Shown: piece by piece, positions 1 to 20,750 of the stretch | Position numbering within the stretch: the first letter of the stretch is position 1 | Layout: the number at the start of each line of letters is the position of its first letter | Source of the DNA: Tubulanus polymorphus | Lineage: Eukaryota > Animalia > Nemertea | Length of the DNA stretch: 64,000 nt | Assembly: GCF_964204645.1 (NCBI RefSeq) | Contig: NC_134035.1 | Coordinates: 5,456,001 to 5,520,000 of the forward strand | Direction: 5' to 3' | The notes under the pieces: generated by a model | Told to the model about the DNA's origin: nothing | Seen by the model: only the letters and a program-made list of their open reading frames with translations | The model's database searches: none | Program-made: the position numbers and the translations under genes

Positions 1-587
1 AAAATTTAGGTAGAAAAATATTTGGGTAATTTTTTGGTTGGGTAGAAACTTGGGTAGAAATATTTAGGTAATTTTTTACCTAATAAATGGTGGATAAAAA
101 ACGGATATAAATTCTATATTTATAAGGCTTTTTACCGGTACTTAAAAAGCCTGAGCATGTTGATAATTATGTAAGGATGAGTCCACTATGTAGAAAAAGG
201 GTGGTAGACAACAAAGACAAGATAGATTCATGTGATAAAATTAACATCATTTGTACAAAATTGTTGACAATTTAATAAGACCCCTCCCTCCTCTGGCTTA
301 TGATGTAATAAATGGATGACCCCTCACTAACTCTTAAATGATAATGATTTATTTCTCGAAAGCTTTTGGTGTTAAAACAACCTCAGAGCAATCTAAACCA
401 AACCAGATCAAAATAACACAATTAGTAGAACTAAAATCAGTCATAGAATTGTCTAGATATAAAAAAACAATTCAGTTGATTTTTGGCCTTGACCTCAGCA
501 CTTAGTTTGTCAAAAAATTACAAGGTTTAATGAAAATACTTTATAAAATTGATATTTGAATGTGGTATGTATTTGTTTCTATTTAAG

Positions 588-922
588 GGTGCTACAGGGT
601 TTGCCGGATCTGGACTGAAACTAGAGGCTAAGAAAGATCGACCAACACTGCAGGCTTAGTAGATTCATGGCTGGCATAACAGAGCTGAAAACCCTTCAAA
701 GAGTCGGAAGATCAGAATTCTGATGGAGGTCAACATGGCAAATTTGCAGCCCTGAAAAGTTGAGGTCAACACATTTTGATAAATTGCAAATTTGTATTTT
801 GATTATTGTAAATTATGTACATAGATTTCACGGACACCAGCGATGTATTTTAGATTATATGAATTAAAGATTTGTTAATAGTATTGTTGTTGTAAATGCT
901 TTTATTGTAAAATGTAAATAAA
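588..922 (+). other. Possible terminal exon and 3' UTR of a gene starting upstream of the window
   Basis: Pyrimidine tract plus AG at 586-587, short open frames ending in stops (e.g. GATGFAGSGLKLEAKKDRPTLQA*), AATAAA at 917-922. No family recognised. Confidence 0.25.
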
Positions 923-1176
923 TGTACATATCTGATGTCGGAAAATTTAAAGTTGTTGACATTTTTTCGATAAAGTATGTTTTTGATGGATTTTTAGTTT
1001 GAGGAATGAGTTTCGGATCTGGGCCGCGAAAGGATTATGGATAAATCCTAGTAAAATTTGACTTTAAACTTCCAAGAAGGAAGTTCCTGGCCCGAATAGG
1101 ATCTTTTGCCTGATAAAACTACCGTCCGATGCTGCCATCTACTGCCCTTGCGTGGAACTACGCAAAAAATAAGAAG

Positions 1177-4100
1177 ATGGATTTAGCTGAAGAAACTGGA
1201 TGGCAACCGCATTTAGCGGGTTTATTGAATAGATTGAAGCGTACAGGAGATTACCACGAGTTCAGGGCGATTGAAACCGACTCCAGAAGAGTTTTATTTT
1301 GCGCTCAAAAAAACTACCTTCGGTGAGTATCAATTCAATTCAATGTAGTTTATATTGCGAGCTATAAACGTGGACTGAGTTTACACAGACAGAAAACAAC
1401 GTTCTTTTCTACGAAGTCTCAGTTGAAATGAACGCGTAGTTCGATAGGAAACAATTGTGTGGATGTTGGTTTTTATTTCTGAAGGGGTTTTTACAAATGA
1501 CATGCGCCTAAAAAGCTGGAGGATGGCTCAACAGAGTCAAAAGTAGACAGAAAACTCAGACAACTGGTTCTCCTTCAGCAGTTCAGTTTGTGGAGCGATT
1601 TAATTTCTCAAAAGCCGTGTTTTTTCAGATGCGATCAAACAAACTGTACGCTGCATGTGCTTGTAGTAAATAAGTAAGATGATGCGATATGTACAAATTG
1701 CAGCGTGTAGTAGGTGGTGCCACTCTACCGCTAGGATTTCAGCTGTGCGGAGATGCTCTTCATCTTCGACCACTGGTCGTCGACCGATCGACCCGTCGCT
1801 GCTGTCGACGGTTAAACCGCTGAAACCAACGAAATCGAAATCGAGCACCGACACGAAAAAACACTTCGTCGATTACCGGGTCGTGAATTTCGTCGGCGGC
1901 AATGGAGGCGACGGATGTTCGGCTTTCAGTAGCTACGCCGGTAAAGAGTGGGCGGGGCCTGATGGCGGGGATGGGGGAAACGGAGGTCACGTGATACTCG
2001 CCGTCAATCACAACGTGAAGAGTTTGAATCATTTAACTGGTTTGATACGCGCGAAAAACGGTGATAAAGGTCGTTCGAAATGTTGCCACGGAAAAAATGC
2101 CGATCACGAATACGTCGAAGTTCCGCTGGGAACGATCGTCAAACTGGCCGAAACTTACGAAACGATCGCCGATCTCGAGGCGTCAGACTCAGTTTATGTG
2201 GCTGCCCGTGGTGGCGCTGGTGGTAAGGGTAATCATTTCTTCCTAACGAACGAGAATCGAGCGCCTGTTATCGCGGAGCTCGGCGGGATCGGCGAGAGCA
2301 GACGGCTCGTCGTCGAGTTAAAAACAATCGCCGACGCCGGATTGGTCGGTTTCCCGAACGCCGGCAAATCGACGTTACTGCGAGCGATTTCTCGAGCGCG
2401 GCCGAAAGTCGCCGCGTACCCGTTCACGACCTTGAAACCGCACGTCGGGGTCATCGAGTACGAGGATTACGAGCAGGTCGCCGTCGCCGATATACCCGGA
2501 CTGATTCACGGCGCGCATCAGAATCGCGGACTCGGGATCTCGTTTCTGAAACACATCGAACGATGCGTCTGCTTGTTGTACGTGATTGATCTTTCGGTCG
2601 ACGAACCGTGGAGACAACTCGACGATTTGAAATTCGAACTCGAACAGTATCAGCGCGGTTTATCCGAGCGTCCGCACGCCATCGTCGGGAATAAGATAGA
2701 CGTTCCCGACGCGGCGCGGAATCTGATCGAACTGGAACGACGGATCGATATGCCGGTGTTCGCATTATCGGCGAAGAGACTGATCGACGTCGAACCTCTG
2801 ATGCTTCATTTGAGAAAACTTTACGACGATCATCGCCGCAGTAACGATGATAGTGCTAATTAATGAATGAGATTATGCTAATTGATATGCGATATTTTTG
2901 ATCCTGTTTTTACAGTGTGGTTGTAGAATAAAAGATTGTGTCGCTTAACGAATGTCTTTAGTACTGGTGTTTTATCTATCTGCAGGGGACAGTTGCTGAT
3001 AACCGGTGGATGTATAGTAACAATGAACTTTTAATTGTCACTATGTTAACTAATCACTTGTTAACTGTAACCAACTTTTGAGCAACTGGCCCCAGGTCTG
3101 TAAATGCTCCTTGTAGGCTACTAAAAAGGAGCGATTTTGTAAGGATATTGAGTGGTTGTTCAAGGTGGCTAATACTATAACGTACTTTGAAGGTTGACTT
3201 GAGTTTTTTTGAGTGCAAGATTTCGCCACTAGTGCATAGCAGCTTCACAGGGATGGATCCAGAGGCAAATTTTAAACGACTTGTCACATCCCAAATGGGC
3301 TGTTTGATGTCCAAAAAGGCAATGTTAGGTGTACTCCCGCATATAGGGGCTAATTTTGAAGTACTTGTTAAGTCCCAAAAGGGGACTTCGATGTCCAATA
3401 GGGAAAATTAATCATACTCGCACCCCCGCACTGAAATGAACCAATCATCTGTGTTGACAAAATGAAAAAGGGCACTCAAAACATTTGATGGACTTGAACA
3501 AGTCTCATAAATCCCTCTCAATCTACCCCTGCTTCATAAGGTAAACTACCTGAGCTTTGAGCTTTCGCTGCTAGTGCGTGGTAGCAGGTGAATGAGACAC
3601 TTGTTAAGTTGTAATTATTGTCTTGGAAAAAAGTCTTCTTTTTGGAAGTGCTTGTGAAATGTATTTGAAACTGTTTGAATTCAGTATGAGGGTTAATACT
3701 GCTTGCTCATTTAACCACTGGTTTCAATTCTTTCATTTTTCAGCGAATTATCGATGAAATGGCCGAACGACGGGCTGAACGAGAAATCTACGAAAACGGC
3801 CGTCGAATTACGCAATCAGGGCAACAAATACTTCCAGAAAGAAAAATACAATGACGCCTTACTGAAATATAACGAGGTAGGAAAGATATCTGCTTTGAGA
3901 TACCGGCTGTGCCATGATGCTCCCGATCCTGCGCGGTGTTCATCACCCCACCACTAGTAGCCAATAATGGGTTGGAGTGAAAGATAGAAATGCAGCGGTT
4001 TGATTATGTTTGGATATTTTCAGAGTATATTGAAGGCTCCTCGGGACGATGAATCTCTATCAGTTGGATTTGCTAATAGATCTGCGGTTTCATTCCATAA

Positions 4101-7100
4101 TGCACACTATAATGTACGTAGCAGATATTTCCGTAGTCAATAGATTTTTCTAATTTCTAAGTAACAGCGTCAAGAGTCAGTTTTACATCATTTCTGATCA
4201 AATAGTTTTATGGTGTGTTCGATTTGATTCTTGAAGGTCGCTTTGAAGGACATCGCGCTGTCTCTGGATGCCGGCTATCCGGACAAACTCGCCTACAAAA
4301 TATACAAACGTCGAGGACAGTGTCACGAATACCTCGGTCGCTACGACGATGCGAAACAAGGTCTGTATTAATTGATAATGTGTGTTTACGCGTGATCGAT
4401 GACTCTCCATATTTTAGAGAATGATTCTATTTTTAGCGTACTCGTCAGCACTTCAATTCCTGAATGAATACACAACGCATTTGAAACCTGACGTAAAGTG
4501 TAAGTACATTATTTTCTGCTCTTAACCTTCAATTTTTGCTACTGATGAATTTATTTGAATAGCAATGAAAAAAAAAAGTTATGGGTTGTAAGATGATAAT
4601 AGAGTTTCCTATTGCCTATATTGAGTTGGTGATTGATTAAGAATTAGTAGAATTCTACAATTGATTGAGGTCTTAAATCTTGTACAGAGGTCTACAAGTT
4701 TTAAAGGCCTATGGTCAACAGGTTACTCTCTGACACCACTCAAATAATGAAATTGTCAAATTTCATTGCTCTGCTTCGCAAATGTTTGAAGTTGTGATAA
4801 CCGGCAATATTCGTCGGAAAAAGTCTTGTTTTTTAAATGCTCGCGAAAGGCATTTGAACTAAGAATTCCGCGTCTCATTTTATAAAACCACTAAGTCTTT
4901 GACTTTTTTGGTTTTTTCAGCTGGTCATATCGATGATCTGACGAAATTACTAAAAAATGTCGAAACAAAGTTGAACAAACCCACCGCTGTCGAGGCAAAG
5001 AAAACAGATGGCGACGGTCCGAAGAATCTCCCGAAACTGAGTTACGGCGAAAATGAGTCGATTCCAGCCGCGACCAGTCGAATCAAAGTGAAAATTGACT
5101 CCAAAACGGGTCGATCATTGATCGTGAGTTTATACAGACTCTTTCATATCATTCTTGGAAAATTTCACATGGTTCTAGCGAGTCCTAAAAATCCTTGGAA
5201 ATTAGCAATTACCAGGAATTTTAGAAATGTTGCGGTTTTAGTATCAAAGGCCTAGTAGTAATTGTTTTCATAAACTTTCAATTCATATGTGAGTATAATA
5301 AGCTCATAACTCATACATTGAGTTGTCTATTTGCATTCGGCCCTTCCTGGAAAAGCCATGGAAAATCAAAGAGTGCAAATAGTGAATAGAACAAAACGTC
5401 ATTCAGTTGCAGTCTAGATATTACATGTTTATCTTACACACAGCTTTTTTAGTAGTCTCTCTTTAAGCTGGGGTTGTGCTGTAGATTGTTCATAAGGACA
5501 ACTTAAGGAATAGATTGATTATTTTTGCAGGCTGCTGATGATTTAAGAGCTGGCGATAATTTGATAATCGAAGAGCCGTACGTGTCGACACAGTTACTGA
5601 AATTTGAACGAGAACGCTGCCACCATTGTTACGCCGTAACGAAATACCCCGTACCGTAAGTGGATCAGTCTCAAAACTGTCGAGCCTTGAATGTATCCAA
5701 CTTTAGAGCCAAAATATCAAACCCTTTTCTCTCTCCATAGGTGCAATCAGTGCAGTCGTGTTGTTTACTGTTCTAAAGAATGTCAGATGGAATCGTGGCA
5801 TCAATATCACTATATAGAATGTCAAATACTCTACATTCTTTACGAGGTCAGTTTCATACATTAACCTCACGTGAGGTTAATACGAGGTTTGTTAGTTGAA
5901 CCTTTATATTTCTTCATGCGCACGTATTGTATTATCAACTAACGATACAGGTAACAACACTTTTGAGTACTATGTGATATTTAAGCCAGTCTTATATTCT
6001 GCAGGGCGTTTATACAATGTTACGAATTTCGTTTTAGACTGGTCTCGCTCACCTGTGCTCAAGACTCGTTATCAAAACAGGAATTCCTTATCTGAAAAGT
6101 ATGCGTTTCTTGATCTGAAATTAAAATTTTCAACACTTGGGTTCTTACAGATCAGGGAATTCAGGATTTATTTTTTTCCTTATTCTGGAAAAATCTGGGA
6201 ATTCCGTCTGTTCTATCTGGTGACGAGTGGCACAAGGAACCTCTCGATAAGAAATCGCGTCAATGGGGATATCTCGAAGATATAATCAGCAAATTTTTGC
6301 TCAAGGGAAAATTACGTATATATCAGGGAATTTCGGATTCTCTGTTCCGTAAGAACCCGGCACACTATGAAGATTCTGGATGAATCGAAGAACTAGGATG
6401 ATACCTTTTCAGAGTTCCATGAACGATTGAAGTCCGGTTCGTCGTCCACTGCCGCGCCAGGATTTACCGAGGATGGGAAATATTTGAACGACTATGAGGC
6501 GGTTTACAGTTTGTTGACGCACACTGAGAAACTAAACGTCGACGATCTGTTTTACTATTCAATGGTACGTCGTAATGAACATTATTGAAATCGGAATACC
6601 CGTATTGAATATAAGAGACGATGATTCTGATTCTTTTTTTAGACTGCCGTGTTGCTTACGAGTCTGGTGAAAAGAAGGGGATTTTTTGATACCAATGTTG
6701 CACAGGTGCTTATTATTATGTATTTCTCAAAATATCCCATTCATCGACAAGTCACCACTTATATGTTCCCCGTAGTATGATGATATATTTTAAGTAGCCC
6801 TATTTCGGCTTGCGAAAAATTTTGAATTCAATTTAACTGATTCATGTTAGAGTATTAGAAATGGCTGGGGTAATGATACCGAGAATGTAAGGCACTCTTC
6901 GCTGGATTGAGCGCTGTATAAGGCACATATTATCATTATTATCATGTAACTGTGGGAGGAGTTATGTTCACTTTTCCTCGTTGGTTTCCTGTCGAATGAC
7001 ACGGCGCTGAAAGAAGTTTAATGTTTTATCTATGTACAGACGAACTCTCAAAACCAGACGGCTTCATCAACCGATGGAAACCAGCATTTAAACAGCGGAC

Positions 7101-9728
7101 GAGCTCAACTTCACGACGACGAACAACCGGTTTTCACAGATTTTGAGATATTCGTCGGTGGTCTGATGCTGCGTCATTTCCAGCAGTTTATCTGCAACGC
7201 TCAAGCGATCACGAACGTAACACCAGACACAACGAACGATAAACACAGTATGATGGAAGGCTACGTTTACGATGTGTCAGAAAAACGTATCGGGGTCGGA
7301 ATTTATCCTACAGCGAGTTTAATGAATCATTCCTGTCAGCCGACCGTATTGTGCAGGTGAGATTCACTAACAATCATTAAAAACTGATAACTACAGTCGA
7401 TTGTCAGAATGGGATGCAGGGTACAGACAGCATATTGTCTGAATTAGATGCAGGGTACAGACTGCAGATTGTCTGAAGGGCTGGAGGGTACAGAAAGCAG
7501 ATTATCTGTCTGAGGGGTTTCAGGGTACAGACAGTAGATTGTCCAAAGGGTTGGAGGATACAGACTGCAGATTGTCTGAGAGGGCGCAGGGTACAGACAG
7601 CAGATTGTCCGAAGGGTTGGAGGGTATAGACTGCAGATTGTCTGAAGGGTTGGAGGGTACAGACTGCAGATTGTCTGAAGGGCTGGAGGGTACAGAAAGC
7701 AGATTATCTGTCTGAGGGGTTTCAGGGTACAGACAGCAGATTGTCAGAAGGGTTGGAGGATACAGACTGCAGATTGTCTGAGGGCGTGCAGGGTACAGAC
7801 AGTATATTGTCTGAGAGGGTCAGGGTACAGACAGCAGATTGTCTGCAAGGTTGGTACAGACAGCAGATTGACCCCTGCATTAACCCTTTCAGTGCTGACT
7901 AATTAATACCCTATAGTGCTGGAGAAAATTTGAAAATTCTAAAAAATTCCACCCTAGTGTGTTGAACAATGGGAATACCACTATAGTGCGTCTACACCGC
8001 AGTGCGGTGTATCGTTAGTTACTAGTATTTCACTATGTTTGACACTTGCTGCCATTTTTCAATAGAGATAATTACAAATTACTAATTACATCAATACACC
8101 GCAGTGCGGTGTACTAGCAAAATCCATCACTGATTTATACACCGCACTGCGGTGTAGACGCACTGAAAGGGTTAAGCGAAAGTGCATATTATCGATATTT
8201 TTAGTTATCAGGGGAAAAAATTGATCGTCCGTTGCACGGAAAAAACTCGAAAAGGTTGCGACGTTTTCAACTGTTACGGACCGCATTATAAACGCATGAA
8301 TACCGAACAGAGACGACAGATTCTACGCGAGCAGTATTACTTCGAATGTCAGTGTACGGCCTGTATGAACGACATGTCCGCCGCAACGTGGCATGTGAGT
8401 ATTCATTTCATCCGATCAAATTGCGTCATACCTTCCCCTATATGCAGGAAGGGAATTATTTGAAATTTCTGGTATAGCTGTCAGTTTTGATGTTGTCAGA
8501 TGTTGGCGTGTGTAAAGTGTTCAGGTCCGATCGTCGACTTGGTTTGTAACGAGTGCAAACATCGAATTGACGCCGATGAAAAGGACAACAGACTACTAGC
8601 GGCATCTGAACCGATGGAGAAGGCCAGCGATCTCGTCGACCAACGCCGGTTTGCAGGTAAACGCAGGGTGAAGTTGGGTGCGTCTTAAGAGAAGGCGGGA
8701 CTCACCTTTTTAGCGGTGATTTTTTGATTACTACTTTTTTTGAATAAATTACGATGATATGTATGAATTATCTCACACAGAGGCACTGGATTATTTGAAG
8801 AAGAATTACGACTTTGTAAAGAAATCTTTCTACAAGTATAACCGCAGTTTAGGCTCGTACGAGGACTTATTATCTCTGTGTTACATCGAGGATAATTCTT
8901 ACTGTAAGTACTTCCTGGCTGCACGCTTTCAGATATTAGATACTTTATCTTACGATTTTAGATCATACATACATCATATGTGTTCAGATCTTCACCTGAG
9001 ACGTTTTCTATCGAAAATAAACTACTTACACCAGACATTAGACATTTTATCAGCACACTTTCAAAAACTGATCATCCATATTTCACATGTGTTCAGAACT
9101 TCGCCTGAGATATTTTCTATTGAAAATGAACTTCAAACACCTTACATTAGACATTTTATTAGCACAAATTCAAAATAAACTGATCATCCACGCTTCACAT
9201 GTGTTCTGAACTTCACCTGAAAATTGAAAATGAACTACAAACACCAGATATTCAGCACATTTTCAAAAACTTGTCCACACTTCACATGTGTTCAGTAGTT
9301 CACATGAGAAATTTTATCAGAAAACTTTTACTGTTTGTCCATACTTCACACTACGTACAGTGATGAATGTATGATGGGTTGATCTTCATTATCTTTAGTC
9401 ACAATTAAAGGAATATTTTCAAGGTTTTGAAATCTCTTCTGTATTTCTATTCGCAGACAACCCATGTCTCTCTCTCGAGCATTTAGGACGATCGTTGGCG
9501 ATCGTTGAACAGAATTTCGGTCGTCGTAGTCTCGAATACGCGAAGGAGTTGTGCAATAAACTGATCCCGATTCTCGGCTGCAGCGGCCGTTACGCCGATT
9601 TGCTGAAAACGATCGACGAAGCGCTCGAAATATTGAACGTCTTCTGTCCGGAAAACGACGAAGAAATCGTCGAACTGAAATTTCAGCGCCGTAAATTTCA
9701 GCCGTTCGTCGCGAATTGCGGACGTTGA
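1177..9728 (+). CDS. SMYD4: SET and MYND domain-containing lysine methyltransferase SMYD4-like, 16 coding exons, about 774 aa
   Basis: Phase-consistent GT-AG exons: 1177-1322, 3744-3876, 4024-4113, 4237-4360, 4437-4499, 4921-5123, 5531-5655, 5741-5846, 6038-6098, 6413-6564, 6643-6705, 7040-7356, 8205-8394, 8500-8656, 8781-8903, 9457-9728 (2325 nt). N-terminal TPRs (LRNQGNKYFQKEKYNDALLKY; GFANRSAV; LDAGYP), split SET (TGRSLIAADDLRAGD; GIYPTASLMNHSCQP; NCYGPH), MYND finger (CHHC..PCNQC..YCSKEC..W..YH..EC), post-SET YYFECQCTAC, C-terminal helical region. Confidence 0.9.
1679..2863 (+). CDS. MTG2: Mitochondrial ribosome-associated GTPase 2 (Obg/CgtA family), intronless, nested in SMYD4 intron 1
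   Basis: 394-aa ORF with an Arg/Ser-rich mitochondrial presequence, Gly-rich Obg fold (GGNGGDG..GPDGGDGGNGG), G1 GFPNAGKS, G2 YPFTT, G3 DIPG, G4 NKID, G5 SAK. Confidence 0.95.
   Translation: MMRYVQIAACSRWCHSTARISAVRRCSSSSTTGRRPIDPSLLSTVKPLKPTKSKSSTDTKKHFVDYRVVNFVGGNGGDGCSAFSSYAGKEWAGPDGGDGGNGGHVILAVNHNVKSLNHLTGLIRAKNGDKGRSKCCHGKNADHEYVEVPLGTIVKLAETYETIADLEASDSVYVAARGGAGGKGNHFFLTNENRAPVIAELGGIGESRRLVVELKTIADAGLVGFPNAGKSTLLRAISRARPKVAAYPFTTLKPHVGVIEYEDYEQVAVADIPGLIHGAHQNRGLGISFLKHIERCVCLLYVIDLSVDEPWRQLDDLKFELEQYQRGLSERPHAIVGNKIDVPDAARNLIELERRIDMPVFALSAKRLIDVEPLMLHLRKLYDDHRRSNDDSAN
2927..2932 (+). terminator. Polyadenylation signal of MTG2 (intronic relative to SMYD4)
   Basis: AATAAA 64 nt after the MTG2 stop, followed by GT-rich sequence. 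Confidence 0.6.
2986..3092. mobile_element. Short MITE with CAG target-site duplication (PIF/Harbinger-related, NuwaI-like)
   Basis: CAG|GGGACAGTTGCT ... AGCAACTGGCCC|CAG: terminal inverted repeats and a 3-bp direct repeat. Confidence 0.6.
7395..7870. repeat. Minisatellite, unit about 30 bp, in SMYD4 intron 12
   Basis: About 15 copies of GGGTACAGAC(A/T)GCAGATTGTCTGAAGGGTTGGA-like units. Confidence 0.9.
7884..8171. mobile_element. piggyBac-type MITE (copy 1)
   Basis: TTAA|CCCTTTCAGTGC ... GCACTGAAAGGG|TTAA; internal palindromes ACACCGCAGTGCGGTGT; inverted sister copy at 16448-16733. Confidence 0.85.
8935..9325. repeat. Degenerate tandem repeat in SMYD4 intron 15
   Basis: About four recurrences of TTCACATGTGTTCAGAACTTCACCTGAGA...CATTAGACATTTTATCAGCAC. 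Confidence 0.7.
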
Positions 9729-10302
9729 CCAATAATGGTCGCGAAATCAAATTAGATACGTCAAGTTTCGACATCTGGAGTCGGTGTCACAGTTCAGAGT
9801 TCGAATGAACTGTATTTAGTTTGATTTTCATTCGTTTAAGTTTACAATTACTGTATTCCTCAGTTCAGTAACGGTGAAATCTAGTAGTACTTGGTAGGTT
9901 AACTAGATTTTATTCAAAATATTTCACTACAGTGCATCATAGTATGCAACTGCTTACTATGATGCACTAGTAGCTAAAGCTCGTACTATTCTTGATATAC
10001 CGGTTATCAAGTTAACCTACAACACTAGATTAACAAGGCTCTACAACTATTGTATTCTTAACTGAATTTGTAAAAACAAAATGTTTATTTTAAAAACGAG
10101 GGCGTGTATAAAATAAGTACACCTGAAAACTTACATATTAGTTTTTTTTATATGTAGCTGCTGGTTGTTTTGATAGCTCTTATTTGTATCGGGATCAACG
10201 CCTCTGAATAATCATTATAGACAACAAATAAGATCAGCAATTTGAAGAATAATTCGTTTCTCCATCAGCACAGAACATTTTGACGACGTTAGAGCCTACT
10301 GT

Positions 10303-10460
10303 CAACTATCATAGATCATTACTCTCAACTATCATAGAGCATTACTCTCAACTATCATAGAGCATTACTCTCAGCTATCATAGATCATTACTCTCGGCTA
10401 TCATAGAGCATTACTCTCAGCTATCATAGATCATTACTATCACAGCTCACAGAGCATTTA
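10303..10460. repeat. Tandem repeat, 23-bp unit
   Basis: About 6-7 copies of CTATCATAGA(G/T)CATTACTCTCA(A/G). Confidence 0.9.
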
Positions 10461-11052
10461 ACCACTTTAACCTGATCTCAAATATCTACCCTATTAATGC
10501 AAATATTAAATGGGCTATTTGGAATTTTTGATTGTGTTTCAAGATTTCTTTGAACATTATGCAAACCAGGAGAAAAAATCTGCAGATACAACAGCGATAT
10601 TTGATCTTGAAATAGGGATCGTCGCTAGTAATTATTTGGTTAGAAGATTTGGTCGATATTGTTTTGAGTGTCCGTTAAAAACCCACCACACCTGCCGGGT
10701 ACAACAGCGATAAAAGTAGGCCTACACGATTATTGGTCGTTACAAGTACTTGAGTGGAAACTTAGCATTGGTAAACCCAGTCCATCATCCCTACCAGTCT
10801 GCTGTCCTGGAGCAGATGGACGCGGTCAGTTATTGCTAACTGTAAACAATACCGATGTCCGGTTGGGGATTCCATTATTAATATTGAAAATGTTATAACG
10901 TGTGTTATACGCTGGAGATTTGATTGAATCGTCGATAAATTCAATAGGATTACGTGGTCAATATGCGATCGTTGCGACAACATAAAGCGATGTCATGATT
11001 TATTTGCGGATAGTGTAGGTTTCAAATATCTAGTTCGTCGCATTGGTTTAGG

Positions 11053-12177
11053 ATGATGAGGTGTTGGAACAAACTACTGATTGGATTAGTCTTTTTACTG
11101 ATTTTCATCGAGATAATGTGTTTAATGTTCCTGGCAGCAGAACGACAAACCGATCAGCGCCAATTTTCGACCCGGGCCGCGGCTTGGCGGTCGCAGCCCC
11201 GCGATAGGAATATGACAGTCCTCTACTACGACTCGGTGGCTAAAGTGTTGGAGGAACAATTGGAAACGTCGAATTGGAAATGCCCGACGACCCCTAAACG
11301 GCGGATACACCAAACGTGGAAAAACGAAAGCATTCCGAAAACGTTCGAGAAATACGTGGCGTCGTGGGTGAAATTACACCCCGATTGGGAATATTGGTTG
11401 TGGACTGATCGCATCGCCGACGAGTTCGTTAAAAAGAGATTTCCAGCCTATTATCGAATGTTCGACAAATATTCGAAGGGAATTCAAAGAGCCGACGCGA
11501 TTCGCTATTTTATTCTGTATACGTTTGGTGGAGTTTACGCCGATTTAGACGTGGAGGCCATTCGGCCATTTAGTAATTTAATAACCGTTCACCCGGCGCT
11601 GATACCCGAAGATCATCCCGTCCATAGCGTTATCTATTTCGGTCGACGGCGACCGTCCACTCTAAACGCGTTGATGATTTCGACGCCTAAACATAAATAT
11701 TTTCGGAAAATAATCGAGTTTCTACCGAAAGCGAACACGAGAACGGGTAAAGGCGACGTTATACGGAAAACGGGTCCGTTTATGATCGATAAAGTGCTCG
11801 TATCTTACGAGAAAGCGGCAGCCCAAAAAAGCCACCGCATCGTTTCGATATGCGATGCCGTCTATTTTGCTTCCTACTCTAGATTCACTCCGCACTTCAA
11901 AGCGGCTAATTTAACTTCATTAAAACGCGTTTGTAACCGACGCAGATCCGCTTCATCGCCACGAGGTAAAATTTGCCAGGCTTTGAAACGCACCAATTTC
12001 AAAAATGAACCGCTCGGGCCGGAAGTGATGTCGAATCACGCGTTTCATCACACGTATTACGATAAAGCCGAATACAAGATTCAAATTCCGATTCGCGACG
12101 TCGTCAAAAATCCGTTCGATATCAGGAAATACATCGAAAACATGGCAGCTGACGCAGATTTTGCGAAACTCATTTGA
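11053..12177 (+). CDS. Glycosyltransferase family 32 (DXD), SUR1/CSG1/OCH1-like, type II membrane protein, intronless
   Basis: N-terminal TM (LLIGLVFLLIFIEIMCLMFLA); RRIHQTWK, SW..LHPDWEYWLWTD, IQRADAIRYFILYTFGGVYADLD, TGP motifs of the Gly_transf_sug domain. Confidence 0.88.
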   Translation: MMRCWNKLLIGLVFLLIFIEIMCLMFLAAERQTDQRQFSTRAAAWRSQPRDRNMTVLYYDSVAKVLEEQLETSNWKCPTTPKRRIHQTWKNESIPKTFEKYVASWVKLHPDWEYWLWTDRIADEFVKKRFPAYYRMFDKYSKGIQRADAIRYFILYTFGGVYADLDVEAIRPFSNLITVHPALIPEDHPVHSVIYFGRRRPSTLNALMISTPKHKYFRKIIEFLPKANTRTGKGDVIRKTGPFMIDKVLVSYEKAAAQKSHRIVSICDAVYFASYSRFTPHFKAANLTSLKRVCNRRRSASSPRGKICQALKRTNFKNEPLGPEVMSNHAFHHTYYDKAEYKIQIPIRDVVKNPFDIRKYIENMAADADFAKLI

Positions 12178-12799
12178 ATTAACAAACGTAATTTCGGTTT
12201 TTAACGGAGTGTGCAGAAAGACTTGGATCTCTGAAATAGACATTTCTCAAGATTTCAAATGTTATGTACGGTACACGGAAAAAGACTGGAAACAATTTTC
12301 CTTCCGTTTTGTCATCTTAGAAGTTTCCTGTTTGTGTCGTGAAACATTCCGAAAACGCCCCACCTGAACTACCACCGATAGAGCCCGAAATTGTTGAAGT
12401 CACATTGAAAGAGAAATCCAAAGTTCAAGCTTTGACCACTTTACAAAGCGGTTTTTACATTTATTTTACATATTTCTATTAAGTTTTATTCAATTGTATA
12501 AATAAATATGGGGTAACCAATGCCTTTTGGCATTGGATCAGTCGGATAATTTCATTTGCATCAAATTGTCGGTCTGGGGCCGTCAGTACTCTTGCTATCG
12601 GTGAAATTCCACTGATAGTCTCGGTTTTGAAACTCATTTGGACCTGGTGACTTTGGTTCGGACTTACAATACCCGTACACGGTTGCTCGTACACAATGCC
12701 TTTCCCAGTTGCTGAGAGGAAGGATCTAGGAGTCCGCCGTGCACTAGATTGTGCGGGTGGCATTTAATTTAGGGCAGATTTTTGCGGGGGCTGCAACGG

Positions 12800-13093
12800 T
12801 AACTCAGGCGAGGCCGATCCATTTTGCCCGTGGCCCATTTTCGTTTTTGCTCAATTCCAAGGGGGACACATTCGAATTTTGATGGGGATGGACCAATCCA
12901 CCCGGTTCAGCCCTGTTGTCTCGCCCGGCGGCGATCACGGCACGGCGCCGGCCACCAGACCGGTCCTCCAGTCGGTTGTATAACATCTAACCAGTTCTAT
13001 AAGGATCGAAGAAACGTTTGAATGGTCCGTTGTCTAGTATGGCCATCATCCTAATCAATCAATCAATCAATCAATCGATCAATCAATCAATCA
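12800..13093 (+). mobile_element. Probable non-LTR retrotransposon 3' fragment with (AATC)n tail
   Basis: GC-rich island with decayed Arg-rich frames ending in an (AATC)n microsatellite at about 13053-13093. Confidence 0.4.
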
Positions 13094-13577
13094 GTGATGA
13101 AGGAATGAGGGGTAAGTAATTGGTTCGTAAAGGCGGTGAATGAGTTTTACACAGGCAAGCGAGTAGTGCTAGAAATGCCTTAGGTCAAGTGGCAGGTGGC
13201 TACTGGAGTCAGGTGTCTATAACGTGTAGTTTACACATTCACCGCCTACCATGTGTGAAGGGGCAGCACTGAACGGTCTATTGCCTCGATGAAGTGTAAT
13301 CAAACTCTGGCAACCAAGGATATCGCCGTAACTTTGGTCACATGTAAACAATATGGCGACCTCCATGTAAAATGTAGATTGACATTTTGGAATGAATTTC
13401 GCAAATTATTCAATGAATTGACCCCATGATTTAACTGAAGGCACAGTACATACAGATAGTGATTTACTCGTTATTTTCTACAACTGAAGCTAGAGTGGTA
13501 AGTGAAATTTAAGTATTTAGTGCTAGAAAAATGAAAAAGTCTTGATGGTAGACAGTCTGAGTATTGATTAGTGAGTG

Positions 13578-13670
13578 TCTGTGGTTTAGTTTCACGATCG
13601 GATATTTTCACAAAACATGTATAAGCTCATCCTATTATAAAAAGCTTACTACCAACGATTAGGTAACTAA
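13578..13670 (+). repeat. Interspersed repeat, short ('empty') copy
   Basis: TCTGTGGTTTAGTTTCAC...ATAAAAAGCTTAC.ACCAACGATTAGGTAACTAA matches 15573-15630 joined to 15952-16006. Confidence 0.75.
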
Positions 13671-14085
13671 GTCGTGATTGACTTTGGTCAATATGACAAT
13701 GGCAATGTCAATGTATTTATAGGCCTATTTATTGTATGAAATGACAGTCATTGACAGTTTTGTATTGATTTGCATTTATGAGTTAGACTAAATGAGTGGA
13801 TGACACTTGTTTCACAATCACTGATGAAGTAGGCAATTCTGGCCTATTTGTTGGCCTTAGGCCCTATATAGTCCTGAATACCAGATGATAGTTCAGAGTA
13901 GGCCTATGGGACAGGGAGGGTTTCCCTGTCCTTTGGCAACAACAAATAGATATTAGAATTATTCTTTTTCTCACCAGTTACTCTACTAAGCCTGATAATT
14001 TTTCGCAGTTAGTTCATTTCAGACTCGTTAAATTTCACAGCACAGCTGGAATGATTTGTTATTTGTTTTCACAGGTTCTGTCGCT

Positions 14086-17000
14086 ATGCCGACTGAAGAA
14101 AATTATACGATAGCGACGAAAGAACAAACGAAATCTAAACAGAATTCAACGTTTGGTCGTAGTCAGCTACACGACGCGTGTGGTTACGGTCAATTAGAAA
14201 CCGTACAACAATTACTAACAGTGAGGCTCATTTATCTCAAATAATTCTCATTTATCTCAAATAATTCTAATTTATTTCAAATGATTCTCATTTATCTCAA
14301 ATAGTTCTAATTTATCTCAAATAATTCTAATTTATCTCATATGATTTTCGTTTATCTCAAATCATTCTCATTTGTCTCAAATGATTCTCATTTTTGTCTC
14401 AAATAATTCTCATTCGTCTCAAATAATTCTCATTCATCTCAAATAATTTTCATACTTCTAAAATATAAATTAATTTCATTTTTTAATCTTTTGAATTTGT
14501 ACAAAGTGAGTGTTTAGTTTTTAAAACATGTATCAATGACATTAACTACTAGACGATGATATGTATATGTTATAAAGGGATCTATACGGAAACTACTATC
14601 TTTTCTTTGAAGAGTCCATTATATAAAATGCTTTATGTTTAGGACGGAACTTGTTGGATCAACCAGAAAACGAGCGCCGGACGAACAGCTCTACACGAAG
14701 CGAGCGCCGGGGGTCATGTCGCCGTCGTGAAATTGTTACTCAGTTACGACGCCGATTTCAGCGCTGAGGATAGAGACGGACGTACCGCGCTGCATGTCGC
14801 AGCGTTTAACGGAGAACTTGCAGTTTTAAAATGTCTTATTCAAAAAGGTTTGATATTCATTTGTGTTCTGTTTCTCGTTTGGGGTTTCTACGATTCGTTG
14901 ATTCCTTATAAACTCCCTCTAAACGGAAAATGCTTTTAAAAGTGCTCGAAACTCCTTTAATCTTAGCAAAATGCCTTATGAAACTCCTTTAAAACTCAAT
15001 GCTGAGAAATTGGTTATGAGAAATGTTTGTACTTGTACAGTAAACTAAATCGGTTCAGTTAGAATTAGTTTTTACCCTATTAGGCTGTTGCCAAATTAGA
15101 AACAGAGTTTACTTAGGTAGTGTTAAGGATAATAAATTGCTTATAAAACCACAGAATTAATGATTTTACCAAAATGAACAGTACAGTTAGGAGGGGTCTA
15201 CAGTAATTGTGATATGAAAGGGATGCAGACCCTTCCTCAAAATTCAAGATTTTCTCCCTTCGAAACTCCTTGGAAACTGCTTATATCCTGGAATGATCGA
15301 TATGCAGGGACCCTGTTGTTGGTGACGTTGGCCAGTGTATATTAATCTAAGCATTCTACATTATGTAAATGAAATTTCAGGAGCTTCGGCAACGTTGGTC
15401 GATAAACAAGGACGTTCGCTGTCTCACTTGGCTTCCATCAGAAATCACGCGAAGATTCTTCGTTATCTGTTTGATTTTGGTATCGATCTGGAATGTACGT
15501 GCAGCGTTGGTAAAATGCCGATGCATTACGCCGCGCAGCATGGAGGTAAGATCCGTTGTAGTCAGTAACCTGTCTGTGGTTTAGTTTCACAATCGGATTT
15601 TTTCACAAACCACGTTGGTATAAGCCCATCTTCACCCGTCAAGGGATTCGAACCCATTGCGCTAAAGCTGTTCCTCGAACCCCTTGACCTCACGAGTCGT
15701 TGGAGTCGTTACTAGCTGACCAGAATCCAGTCGTACCAATCACAGCGCTTGTAACAAACGACATTGGGCTTCTGTTGGTTTTCCTGTTAAATGGACCAAT
15801 CAGCGAACGTTTTACCGAAAAAGGAAGTATTTCGCAAATCGATGTATGACGTCATGCGCAACAGCGCCAGTAATGAATTCACGCTTCGTGAGGCCAGGGG
15901 GGCTGGTGGAAGCGAGTTCGGGAGTGATACTGGACCCCTGGCAAGCGAGGATGGTATAAGCCCATCCGATTATAAAAAGCTTACCACCAACGATTAGGTA
16001 ACTAACTAGATCCGTTGGTGACGTGGATTAGGTTTTTAACACGAAGAGAAAGAAATTTCCAAATACCTCTGATCTACTCTGACCAACCTTACTGATTTTA
16101 AAGTCTGGGTCATTAGTTTTAACCGAAAAGTTAGCAAGTTTTATGTAAAATGTTTTAGCTCCACTTTACGTGATTGAATCCATGTGAAATAGATGAAATA
16201 TGATGTCTCATGAATGAATAAGTCCCGCTATAGAATTCTATATGATAAAATTCATTGAAATGAAACCACAACCTTTCGGCTGTTGACTAATAGCCATCAT
16301 CAGATGGTTCATCATTACATCTGATGAAGCCTGTTGACTAACAGTTAGTCGACAGTTAGTCAACAGCCTAAATGTTGTGGTTTCATTTCAATAGATTATA
16401 TCATATAGAATTCTATTGTGGAACATGTTCATTCATCTACAGTTTTACCCTTTCAGTGCGTCTACACCGCAGTGCGGTGTACGAATCGGTGATGGATTTT
16501 GTTAGTACACCGCACTGCGGTGTATTGATTTAATTAGTAATTACTAATTATCTCTCTTGAAAGATGGCAGCACCTGTCAAACAGTGAAATATTAGTAACT
16601 AACGATATACCGCGCCAGGGTGTAGACGCACTATAGCACTATTCCCGTTATTCAACACACTAGGGTGGAATTTTTCAGAATTTTCAAATTATCTTCAGCA
16701 CTATAGGGTATTAATTAGCCAGCACTGAAAGGGTTAAATGGATCGTAGTGTTTTATTCGACTACTAATGATGTCTCGTTTCATTTTTAGGTTTGGAATGT
16801 TTGATAAGCCTCGTAGAGCGAGATTGTGATACCACATTACCCGACGATAACGGTTTACTGGCGGCTCATTACGCAGCGATGTACGATAATCTCGATTGCC
16901 TGCGATTCTTAATACAACAAGGCACGTCGCTAGAAGTCGTTCAAGGGGAAGGTCGCACTCCCGCTCATCTTGTAAGTTAGATGATAGATGTTTCCTTTGT

Positions 17001-19907: not shown

Positions 19908-20750
19908 CTAAATTCTCCAATGATAGAAATAGCACAGACCCATACTGAAGTTCCAATTAAACACCAGCGACAAAATATAAACAAGAAACATGCCGGTCAT
20001 CGGGTATAAAAATATCTGCGTTCGTTTTAAAAACGAGAGCGCGCTATAACCGAGAAACGTAATATATATATAGTAACAGACAGCGACGAGCCAGAGCGTG
20101 TTCCCGACTAAACAACCGACGAACCAATCGTGATTAACGACGTGCGCGAGAATCGGCAGCTGGAAAAAGTGCAAAATCATCAACAGCGGGAAAAACGCGT
20201 TCAAATGAACGTCGAACGCATAACCCCATTCGACGTCGTCGACGGCCGTCGTGCCGACTCCGCGCGATTGTATCATGTATTTATTACTGACGAACCACAG
20301 CGCGGTCGCCACTAGCAACCCGACGCCGATGCAATCGACGAAGATCACCCACGCTAAAAACTTGGCGAAACCGGCGAACGAGAGTCTGAGAACGACCGCG
20401 AAGCCGATCGACGAAACGAACAGCCAGAAACTGAGCACGACGAGAAACGCCGGGTCGTCGCGCGCGAATTGATCCTTCGTGCATTTGCGATATTGGAAAT
20501 TGCGATAAACCTTCTGCGGCGACACGAACAGGTATAACATCTGCCAGAACGCGTATTCGAAGTCCATTTGGCGAATTTTGAACAGGCGGCGAAAGTATTT
20601 TTGGCGTTTAGCGGACGCGGTGCTTCGCGCGGCCGACATCGACTGGTGATGCGCGGAGTTAGCGCCGCCCGGGGTTACGAGGACGTCCGGCGACAGCGGT
20701 CTCGATCCCGATGGAGATACCGGGGGTGATGTTCTCCCGTAATGATACAT
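19908..20750 (-). CDS. UNC50: Protein unc-50 homolog (Golgi membrane protein), single coding exon
   Basis: 280-aa ORF with QMDFEYAFWQMLYLFVSPQKVYRNFQYRK.TKDQFARDDPAF, VEWGYAFDVHLNAFFP and YYIYITFLGYSALSFLK motifs. A minus-strand acceptor at about 20768 suggests a 5' UTR intron. Confidence 0.96.
   Translation of the reverse strand: MYHYGRTSPPVSPSGSRPLSPDVLVTPGGANSAHHQSMSAARSTASAKRQKYFRRLFKIRQMDFEYAFWQMLYLFVSPQKVYRNFQYRKCTKDQFARDDPAFLVVLSFWLFVSSIGFAVVLRLSFAGFAKFLAWVIFVDCIGVGLLVATALWFVSNKYMIQSRGVGTTAVDDVEWGYAFDVHLNAFFPLLMILHFFQLPILAHVVNHDWFVGCLVGNTLWLVAVCYYIYITFLGYSALSFLKRTQIFLYPMTGMFLVYILSLVFNWNFSMGLCYFYHWRI

What the first reader, a model, noticed from the sequence alone, without database searches (positions are those of the whole stretch)
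1177..3876. MTG2 is a complete gene nested on the SAME strand inside SMYD4 intron 1
Seen: exon 1177-1322 (MDLAEETGWQPHL..., similar to the vertebrate SMYD4 start MDLPVDEWKSYL as I recall it) ends CG|GTGAGT in phase 2. It joins exactly in frame to the acceptor at 3743/3744 (CG+C GAA TTA TCG ATG AAA), the first TPR exon. The 2.4-kb intron between them holds the whole intronless MTG2 ORF and its AATAAA (2927). Established: nested genes more often lie antisense to the host; same-strand nesting forces competition between intronic polyadenylation and splicing. Inference: one promoter may drive two unrelated proteins (a mitoribosome-assembly GTPase and a lysine methyltransferase) by mutually exclusive processing.
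Basis: partly seen in the sequence, partly recalled or inferred. Interest (0 to 1): 0.8.

Follow-up and report, generated by a model that had tools for sequence, protein, structure and literature searches.

The report
MTG2 retrogene sharing SMYD4's first exon
In this ribbon-worm genome the only gene for the mitochondrial ribosome-assembly GTPase MTG2 is an intronless retrocopy lying in the first intron of the methyltransferase gene SMYD4, and RNA-derived contigs show SMYD4's first coding exon spliced either to MTG2 or to SMYD4 exon 2; this is a well-documented example of a known kind of locus.

Summary

Run X4 behaves as RNA. The DNA run X1 holds neither.

Exon 1 is true SMYD4 coding sequence. 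Its peptide matches the conserved N-terminus of SMYD4 from molluscs, arthropods and Hydra, and the intron sits at the same place in two molluscs.

New here: MTG2 is a retrogene. Five intron positions shared by a nemertean, an annelid and a mollusc are all absent, none of those three MTG2 genes lies next to SMYD4, and the genome holds no other MTG2.

In the MTG2 mRNA form, the SMYD4 start codon opens a 64-codon upstream ORF that stops 1 nt before the MTG2 ATG.

Not shown: the transcription start, the share of MTG2 mRNA that uses exon 1, and how MTG2 is translated.

The kind is known: hitchhiking retrogenes such as Taf9/Ak6, and the VAChT/ChAT locus. The scan noted two similar cases elsewhere in this genome (PTAR1 in MRPS18B, CLIC in TAF10). 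I did not test them.

The parts
1177..1322 (+). Shared 5' exon, which is SMYD4 coding exon 1 (start codon plus 48 2/3 codons). Its donor at 1322/1323 is used by both mRNA forms. The true 5' end (transcription start) lies upstream and is unknown. An in-frame ATG at 1129 also exists.
   Evidence: sequence, ORF 1129-1326. (joints 1322>1629 and 1322>3744; only the last 29-30 nt are seen in the X4 contigs). (P0122 starts here). (homology to SMYD4 N-termini: 15.6 bits, 0 of 2000 shuffles).
1323..1628 (+). 306-nt intron removed in the MTG2 mRNA form (GT..AG).
   Evidence: joint skipping 306 nt in a contig of depth 74; X4 has no cover in 1401-1600.
1629..1678 (+). 5' leader of the MTG2 terminal exon. 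It carries the tail of the upstream ORF (15 codons), whose stop TAA lies at 1675-1677, 1 nt before the MTG2 ATG. Stops in all three frames fall within 1664-1677.
   Evidence: translation of 1630-1690. (sequence).
1679..2863 (+). Intronless MTG2 ORF of 394 aa (ObgH1/GTPBP5 orthologue). It has an Arg/Ser-rich N-terminus, a glycine-rich Obg fold and G motifs G1 at 224, G3 at 271, G4 at 338 and G5 at 364.
   Evidence: (only copy in the genome). (five ancestral intron positions absent).
2864..2950 (+). MTG2 3' UTR with AATAAA at 2927-2932. The cleavage site is inferred at about 2945-2955 and was not seen.
   Evidence: The X4 contig stops at 2851, next to two SNPs, so the 3' end is not observed.
1323..3743 (+). 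SMYD4 intron 1 (2421 nt, phase 2). It contains the whole MTG2 unit and, at about 3000-3500, high-copy repeats.
   Evidence: joint skipping 2421 nt; X1 depth up to about 11,800 in 3001-3200. (the intron is at the same codon position in Haliotis and Argopecten and holds no gene there).
3744..9728 (+). SMYD4 exons 2-16: 3744-3876, 4024-4113, 4237-4360, 4437-4499, 4921-5123, 5531-5655, 5741-5846, 6038-6098, 6413-6564, 6643-6705, 7040-7356, 8205-8394, 8500-8656, 8781-8903 and 9457-9728 (stop included).
   Evidence: exact mapping of P0122. (the first ten joints seen in X4). (TPR, MYND, split SET).

Best explanation
A processed copy of MTG2 was inserted, in sense orientation, into the ancestral first intron of SMYD4 in the lineage of this worm. 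It has since become the only MTG2 gene.

The locus now works as one unit with an alternative last exon. Transcripts carry SMYD4 exon 1, whose donor at 1322 has two fates. It is joined to the near acceptor at 1629, and the RNA is then cut and polyadenylated after AATAAA 2927, giving the MTG2 mRNA. Or it skips that acceptor and the poly(A) site and is joined to 3744, giving the SMYD4 mRNA of 16 exons.

The shared exon is coding for SMYD4. So the MTG2 mRNA starts with a 64-codon upstream ORF: the SMYD4 N-terminus plus 15 codons, with its stop 1 nt before the MTG2 ATG.

Shown: the anatomy, both splice joints, the identity of both genes, the homology of exon 1, the loss of five ancestral introns and the single-copy state.

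Inferred: retroposition as the mechanism, a common promoter, the use of the poly(A) signal, and that MTG2 is translated by re-initiation, by leaky scanning, or from transcripts that begin downstream of ATG 1177.
For: Both joints from one donor appear in run X4. Each sits in a contig that begins with the same 29-30 nt, the k-1 overlap expected where a k=31 graph forks after a shared exon. They are absent from DNA run X1.

MTG2 identity: Obg plus G domain; best hits named MTG2, 61-67% identity; PDB MTG2 1e-122 against GTPBP10 6e-45.

Single copy. The two weak matches are GTPBP10 and a DRG-like gene.

Retrogene: MTG2 of Lineus, Owenia and Littorina each has 6 coding exons. Their 5 introns map to the same alignment columns, at Tubulanus residues about 59, 108, 147, 223 and 268. 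All are absent here. None of the three lies beside SMYD4.

Exon 1 belongs to SMYD4: P0122; the N-terminal motif W-Q..L..F..T..R..FC is shared with SMYD4 of 11 animals; intron 1 sits at the same place in Haliotis (aa 47/48) and Argopecten.

Upstream ORF frame.

Against: All RNA evidence comes from assembled contigs of one run (X4) whose record does not say RNA. The body of exon 1 (1177-1292) and the MTG2 3' UTR are not covered by X4 contigs. The tool warns that holes prove nothing, but the start site and the poly(A) site are therefore unseen.

Contig depth (74 and 65) is a whole-contig mean. It cannot give the share of MTG2 mRNA that carries the junction, so an MTG2 start site of its own between 1629 and 1678 is not excluded.

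No poly(A) remnant or target-site duplication flanks the insert. This is expected if the insertion is old, but it leaves retroposition as an inference.

The neighbours of MTG2 also differ among Lineus, Owenia and Littorina, so 'moved' is weak evidence on its own.

ATG 1177 has a strong context (A at -3, G at +4), which makes efficient MTG2 translation behind it hard to explain.
Confidence: 0.7

Rival explanations
1. The two genes are functionally independent. MTG2 has its own promoter in SMYD4 intron 1, with a start at or just after 1629, and that promoter makes nearly all MTG2 mRNA. The exon-1>1629 splice is a minor by-product of SMYD4 transcription running into a good acceptor.
For: Contig depth cannot weigh the junction against the body of the contig (the tool's own warning). 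A strong SMYD4 ATG and a 64-codon upstream ORF would handicap an essential single-copy gene. VAChT has its own promoters inside ChAT intron 1 besides the shared exon (PMC3053374).
Against: In X4 the MTG2 contig runs without a fork from the exon-1 stub through 1629, and 1401-1600 has zero depth.
Confidence: 0.22
2. MTG2 did not arrive by retroposition. It lost its introns in place or by other means and was brought into the SMYD4 intron by a DNA-level rearrangement, or SMYD4 exon 1 was placed upstream of it.
For: There is no poly(A) tract or target-site duplication. MTG2 neighbours differ among the three outgroups, so the gene moves often.
Against: All five ancestral coding introns are gone at once, while the host gene keeps 15 introns. 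The copy is in sense orientation with its own poly(A) signal. SMYD4 intron 1 predates the insert.
Confidence: 0.06
3. The spliced contigs are assembly artefacts, and there is no shared exon in real RNA.
For: Only one run shows them. The evidence is contigs, not reads. The shared side is only 29-30 nt long.
Against: A k=31 contig needs real 31-mers across each joint, and neither DNA nor unspliced RNA can supply them. Both joints lie exactly at GT..AG. The SMYD4 contig goes on through seven further canonical joints whose exon lengths sum to its length. The independently stored protein model P0122 uses the same 1322>3744 join.
Confidence: 0.02

Closest known systems
Hitchhiking retrogenes that use the promoter and 5' exons of a host gene (for example mouse Taf9 using the first two exons of Ak6; review PMC5408686)
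   Same: An intronless retrocopy lies in a 5' intron of an unrelated host gene on the same strand. It is expressed as a chimeric transcript that begins with the host's first exon, and the host still makes its own mRNA by skipping the insert.
   Different: Here the retrocopy is the only MTG2 gene left, so the parent has been lost. The borrowed exon carries the host's start codon and 48 codons, so the retrogene ORF sits behind a long upstream ORF. The animal is a nemertean; the listed examples are mostly from mammals and flies.
Cholinergic gene locus: VAChT inside the first intron of ChAT (PMC3053374, which cites Eiden 1998)
   Same: The whole ORF of one gene is a single exon inside intron 1 of another gene in the same orientation. 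Alternative splicing from a shared upstream exon gives the two mRNAs.
   Different: VAChT and ChAT act in one pathway and the arrangement is conserved from nematodes to mammals. MTG2 and SMYD4 have no known link, and the arrangement is absent from Lineus, Owenia and Littorina. The cholinergic shared exon is, from my own knowledge, non-coding; here it is coding.
PTAR1 retrogene in MRPS18B intron 1 and CLIC in TAF10 intron 1 of the same genome (scan notes s1-511874 and s1-516480; not tested by me)
   Same: Same genome, same design: a complete gene on the same strand in the first intron of a host gene. PTAR1 is reported as an intronless only copy.
   Different: For PTAR1 the shared first exon was reported as not shown. 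Here both joints are seen in contigs.
Cellular dicistronic mRNAs and termination-reinitiation at stop/start overlaps (general knowledge, not tested here)
   Same: A downstream ORF begins within a nucleotide of the stop of an upstream ORF (TAA-g-ATG).
   Different: No evidence here that re-initiation happens. The upstream ORF is a by-product of exon sharing, and no known re-initiation element was looked for.

Membership tests
MTG2 (ObgH1/GTPBP5), Obg-family GTPase of the mitochondrial large ribosomal subunit | N-terminal glycine-rich Obg fold followed by a G domain | tested here: met
   PF01018 at residues 64-216 (2.6e-44) and PF01926 at 220-339 (3.3e-25).
MTG2 (ObgH1/GTPBP5), Obg-family GTPase of the mitochondrial large ribosomal subunit | Intact G1, G3, G4 and G5 motifs | tested here: met
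   GFPNAGKS at 224, DIPG at 271, NKID at 338, SAK at 364.
MTG2 (ObgH1/GTPBP5), Obg-family GTPase of the mitochondrial large ribosomal subunit | Closer to MTG2 than to the paralogue GTPBP10 | tested here: met
   PDB MTG2 1e-122 (413 bits) against GTPBP10 5.8e-45 (157 bits); best hits are named MTG2. The GTPBP10 gene lies elsewhere in the genome (L002).
MTG2 (ObgH1/GTPBP5), Obg-family GTPase of the mitochondrial large ribosomal subunit | Mitochondrial targeting presequence | tested here: inconclusive
   the first 45 residues hold 7 R/K, 1 D/E and 13 S/T, which is the typical composition. No predictor was run.
MTG2 (ObgH1/GTPBP5), Obg-family GTPase of the mitochondrial large ribosomal subunit | GTPase activity and binding to the mitoribosomal large subunit | not testable with these tools
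   This needs biochemistry.
SMYD4 (SET and MYND domain protein 4) | SET domain split by a MYND zinc finger | tested here: met
   on P0122: SET at 249-553 and zf-MYND at 283-322.
SMYD4 (SET and MYND domain protein 4) | N-terminal TPR region | tested here: met
   TPR_1/TPR_2 at 144-171 and TPR_11 at 75-95. One search shows the same exon by exon.
SMYD4 (SET and MYND domain protein 4) | Best full-length relatives are SMYD4 orthologues, colinear from the N-terminus | tested here: met
   28-35% identity over about 700 residues to proteins named SMYD4 in Argopecten, Owenia, Haliotis, Hydra, Biomphalaria, Lottia and Limulus. N-terminal motif.
Retrogene hitchhiking on a host gene's 5' exon | All ancestral coding introns missing | tested here: met
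   five intron positions shared by Lineus, Owenia and Littorina fall inside the uninterrupted ORF.
Retrogene hitchhiking on a host gene's 5' exon | Lies in a host intron on the same strand, and that intron is older than the insert | tested here: met
   intron 1 is at the same codon in Haliotis and Argopecten and holds no gene there.
Retrogene hitchhiking on a host gene's 5' exon | Chimeric transcript joining a host exon to the retrogene | tested here: met
   joint 1322>1629 in an X4 contig that runs through the ORF to 2851.
Retrogene hitchhiking on a host gene's 5' exon | Poly(A) remnant and target-site duplication | tested here: not met
   only a 9-mer was found, which is at chance level and wrongly placed. 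There is no A-tract after 2932. Both marks decay with age, so an old insertion need not keep them.
Retrogene hitchhiking on a host gene's 5' exon | Intron-bearing parental gene elsewhere in the genome | tested here: not met
   no other MTG2 in 268 Mb. It is therefore read as a retrogene that replaced its parent.
Shared-promoter nested locus of the VAChT/ChAT type | Both mRNAs start at one transcription start site | not testable with these tools
   Only contigs were available, and they cannot show starts. The body of exon 1 is not covered in X4.
Shared-promoter nested locus of the VAChT/ChAT type | The two products act in one pathway | not tested
   No link between MTG2 and SMYD4 was found in the paper library (0 papers hold both names).

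The most novel reading that the evidence does not exclude
MTG2, an essential single-copy gene, is made only from the exon-1-initiated mRNA. It is therefore translated obligatorily by termination-reinitiation after the 64-codon SMYD4-derived upstream ORF (TAA-g-ATG). This would tie the output of a mitoribosome assembly factor to SMYD4 promoter activity and to a splice/poly(A) choice. It would be one instance of a genome-wide habit in this worm of replacing parental genes by first-intron hitchhiking retrogenes (PTAR1/MRPS18B, CLIC/TAF10).
Probability: 0.2. Interest if true: 0.65.

Novelty: new member of a known kind. Interest (0 to 1): 0.45.

Why it matters
This is a clean natural example of how a retrocopy gains expression. 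It landed in a first intron, picked up the host's promoter and first exon through a new acceptor, and then replaced its parent, so an essential mitochondrial gene now depends on another gene's 5' end.

The borrowed exon is coding, which gives a ready test case for translation of a long ORF behind a 64-codon upstream ORF with a 1-nt stop-to-start gap.

It also matters for annotation. Pipelines must allow a same-strand gene inside an intron, and two genes may share an exon.

If the two other cases noted in this genome hold, ribbon worms may be a good system for studying gene replacement by retrogenes.

Tried and rejected
- **Exon-1 ORF in the protein word search.** The 65-aa ORF (1129-1323) was searched to find RNA contigs that carry the exon body. 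No candidate was found, which is uninformative.
- **Exon-1 peptide in the own genome.** It occurs only at this locus, so there is no paralogous first exon.
- **The look-up of encoding contigs for P0013, P0122 and P0001.** Nothing is on record.
- **Closest Logan-derived MTG2 relatives.** The aim was to see whether their 5' leaders carry an SMYD4-like ORF.
  - L012 has an 88-nt leader and nothing else.
  - L011 has a twin-Cx9C ORF instead.
  - So the arrangement was not found in another species, but no close relative of this worm is in the collections.
- **Rfam on 1-10000.** No match.
- **Target-site duplication and poly(A) remnant.** None found.
- **Papers holding both SMYD4 and MTG2.** None.
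- **A possible acceptor at 1286/1287 (ctccAG|aag).** It would make a 36-nt mini-exon with an upstream non-coding exon. I set it aside because no joint into 1287 was listed and the conserved peptide argues that 1177-1322 is translated. Contigs alone cannot exclude it.
- **Reading the hole in X4 over 1177-1292 as absence of the exon.** Rejected. The tool states that holes prove nothing, and the MTG2 3' UTR is missing in the same way. The missing stretches are short dead ends, and I suspect the contig assembler trims such ends. That trimming is my assumption.
- **Joined sequences.** I handed no self-joined spliced sequence to any search tool.
  - Exons were searched one by one by reference.
  - Whole-protein work used P0122, a protein returned.
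  - The script only walked that stored protein along the window and printed coordinates.
Full report
**What is in the sequence**

The window is animal DNA. I could not check the name. The closest MTG2 relatives are spiralian, at 61-67% identity.

On the + strand the following features are present:
- An ATG at 1177, in the context aagaagATGg, opens a frame that runs to a consensus donor CG|GTGAGT at 1322/1323. That is 146 nt, phase 2.
- A first acceptor, ttttttcAG|A, lies at 1628/1629.
- Fifty bases later starts an uninterrupted 394-codon ORF (1679-2863), followed by AATAAA at 2927-2932.
- A second acceptor, ttcatttttcAG|C, lies at 3743/3744 and opens an exon that continues the frame of 1177-1322.

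**Identity of the two genes**

The ORF has a full Obg fold and a G domain with intact G1, G3, G4 and G5 motifs. Its best relatives are named mitochondrial ribosome-associated GTPase 2 in dozens of animals. Against solved structures it matches MTG2 at 1e-122 and the paralogue GTPBP10 only at 6e-45.

A search with one SMYD4 exon (7040-7354) returned P0122, a 774-aa protein identical to the window over that exon. P0122:
- starts at ATG 1177 and joins 1322 to 3744;
- maps exactly onto 16 GT-AG exons from 1177 to 9728;
- has TPRs, a MYND finger and a split SET domain;
- has as full-length relatives proteins named SMYD4 in molluscs, an annelid, arthropods and Hydra.

**Is 1177-1322 really SMYD4 coding sequence?**

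Yes, on two grounds.
- Its 49 residues align colinearly with residues 1-50 of many SMYD4 orthologues and share a motif M..(N)WQ..L..F..T..R..FC. Against a profile built from 42 orthologue N-termini without the query, the peptide scores 15.6 bits, and none of 2000 shuffles exceeds 6.6.
- In Haliotis and Argopecten the first coding exon ends at residue 47-50, the homologous position. It is followed by an intron of 0.44 kb and 2.9 kb respectively, with no gene inside.

So SMYD4 intron 1 is older than its MTG2 content.

**RNA evidence**

Only one read-laying run was allowed. Run X1 is DNA-like: about 31x depth and colinear with the window. Run X4, from another individual, behaves as RNA: it covers exons only and shows canonical joints.

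X4 holds two contigs that matter:
- A 1253-nt contig made of the last 29-30 nt of exon 1 joined to 1629-2851.
- An 874-nt contig made of the same 30 nt joined to 3744-3876 and six further SMYD4 exons. The exon lengths sum to exactly 874.

The common 30-nt stub is what a k=31 graph leaves after a fork. That is the signature of one exon with two successors. No joint from MTG2 into 3744 was reported. X1 has none of these joints.

Limits:
- This is one run.
- The evidence is contigs, not reads.
- Depth is a per-contig mean.
- X4 contigs do not cover 1177-1292 or the MTG2 3' UTR. The depth of 20.2 in bin 1201-1400 equals the two stubs alone.
- The tool states that holes prove nothing.

The start site, the poly(A) site and the ratio of isoforms remain unseen.

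**Origin of the arrangement**

- MTG2 of the nemertean Lineus, the annelid Owenia and the gastropod Littorina each has six coding exons. Their five introns fall in the same alignment columns, at residues about 59, 108, 147, 223 and 268 of the worm protein. All five are absent here, while the host SMYD4 keeps 15 introns.
- None of the three outgroup MTG2 genes lies near SMYD4.
- The 268-Mb assembly holds no second MTG2. The two weak matches are GTPBP10 and a DRG-like gene.

The simplest reading is retroposition of an MTG2 mRNA into SMYD4 intron 1, capture of the host's donor through an acceptor just upstream, and later loss of the parent. No poly(A) remnant or target-site duplication survives, so the mechanism is inferred, not shown.

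**Consequence for translation**

The borrowed exon carries the SMYD4 start codon. In the exon-1>1629 mRNA that frame runs on for 15 codons and stops at TAA 1675-1677, one base before the MTG2 ATG (and frame arithmetic). This gives a 64-codon upstream ORF. Stops in all three frames lie within the 15 bases before the ATG.

How MTG2, whose N-terminus looks like a mitochondrial presequence, is translated is open. The candidates are re-initiation, leaky scanning past a strong ATG, or transcripts that begin downstream of 1177. The separate first-reader note s1-493116 had predicted this stop-restart layout, and the splice it needs is now seen.

**Comparison with what is known**

The design is known in two forms:
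- The review PMC5408686 describes retrocopies near the 5' end of a host gene that 'hitchhike' on its promoter and 5' exons, with mouse Taf9/Ak6 as an example.
- PMC3053374 describes the cholinergic locus, where the single-exon VAChT ORF lies in ChAT intron 1 and alternative splicing and several promoters give the two mRNAs.

This locus differs in three ways. The shared exon is coding. The retrocopy is the sole copy of an essential gene. The animal is a nemertean.

The scan holds two more notes of the same design in this genome: PTAR1 in MRPS18B intron 1, followed up as an only-copy retrogene but without the shared exon shown, and CLIC in TAF10 intron 1. I did not test them. If they hold, the pattern is recurrent in this species.

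**Verdict**

The retrogene origin, the replacement of the parent and the upstream-ORF problem are added here. It is a new member of a known kind, of moderate interest.

No self-joined spliced sequence was sent to any search tool. Exons were searched singly by reference, and whole-protein work used the stored protein P0122.

Noticed in passing
window 588-753: A 166-nt contig of RNA-like run X4 covers exactly this stretch at depth about 530, seven to eight times the depth of the MTG2 and SMYD4 contigs. It is single-copy in DNA run X1. An AG precedes 588. There is no Rfam match. It may be an exon or 3' UTR piece of a highly expressed upstream gene, or a small RNA.
   Followed up: partly
window 3000-3500 and 6139-6400: Intron stretches with very high contig depth in the DNA run (up to about 11,800 against 31 for single-copy DNA) and many loose ends. 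They are high-copy repeats, probably mobile-element fragments, one just downstream of the MTG2 poly(A) signal.
   Followed up: no
window 7399-7870 and 8961-9220: Tandem arrays inside SMYD4 introns: a 33-nt unit in 14 copies (also read as a 202-nt unit in 2.2 copies) and a 109-nt unit in 2.4 copies.
   Followed up: no
window 19908-20750 (-) and 11053-12177 (+): Two more complete single-ORF genes in the same window: UNC-50 (280 aa, PF05216 at 1.3e-86) and a DXD glycosyltransferase (374 aa, PF04488 at 1.6e-19). Whether they too are intronless replacements of intron-bearing ancestors was not checked. Together with the scan's notes on PTAR1 and CLIC, this hints that intronless copies are common in this genome.
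   Followed up: partly
L011 42-284 and 315-1445 (Logan contig of ERR1712050): In an unidentified marine animal's RNA contig, the MTG2 ORF (63% identical to the window's) lies 30 nt behind an 80-aa twin-Cx9C (CHCH) ORF on the same strand. From memory the small protein resembles COA4. It could be a dicistronic or operon transcript of two mitochondrial proteins. A contig across two genes does not prove one transcript.
   Followed up: partly
L005 3054-3896 (-) / 4001-5221 (+) and L006 65-7549 (-) / 10001-14662 (+): In Littorina and in a related Logan contig, MTG2 lies head to head with a Lipid_desat (PF10520) gene. This may be a gastropod synteny. It is not shared by Lineus, Owenia or this worm.
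   Followed up: no
window 1195, 2620, 2622, 2852, 2855: The second individual (runs X2-X4) differs at these places. 1195 A>T changes codon 7 of SMYD4 exon 1 from Thr to Ser. 2620 and 2622 lie in adjacent MTG2 codons. 2852 and 2855 lie in the last codons of MTG2.
   Followed up: no
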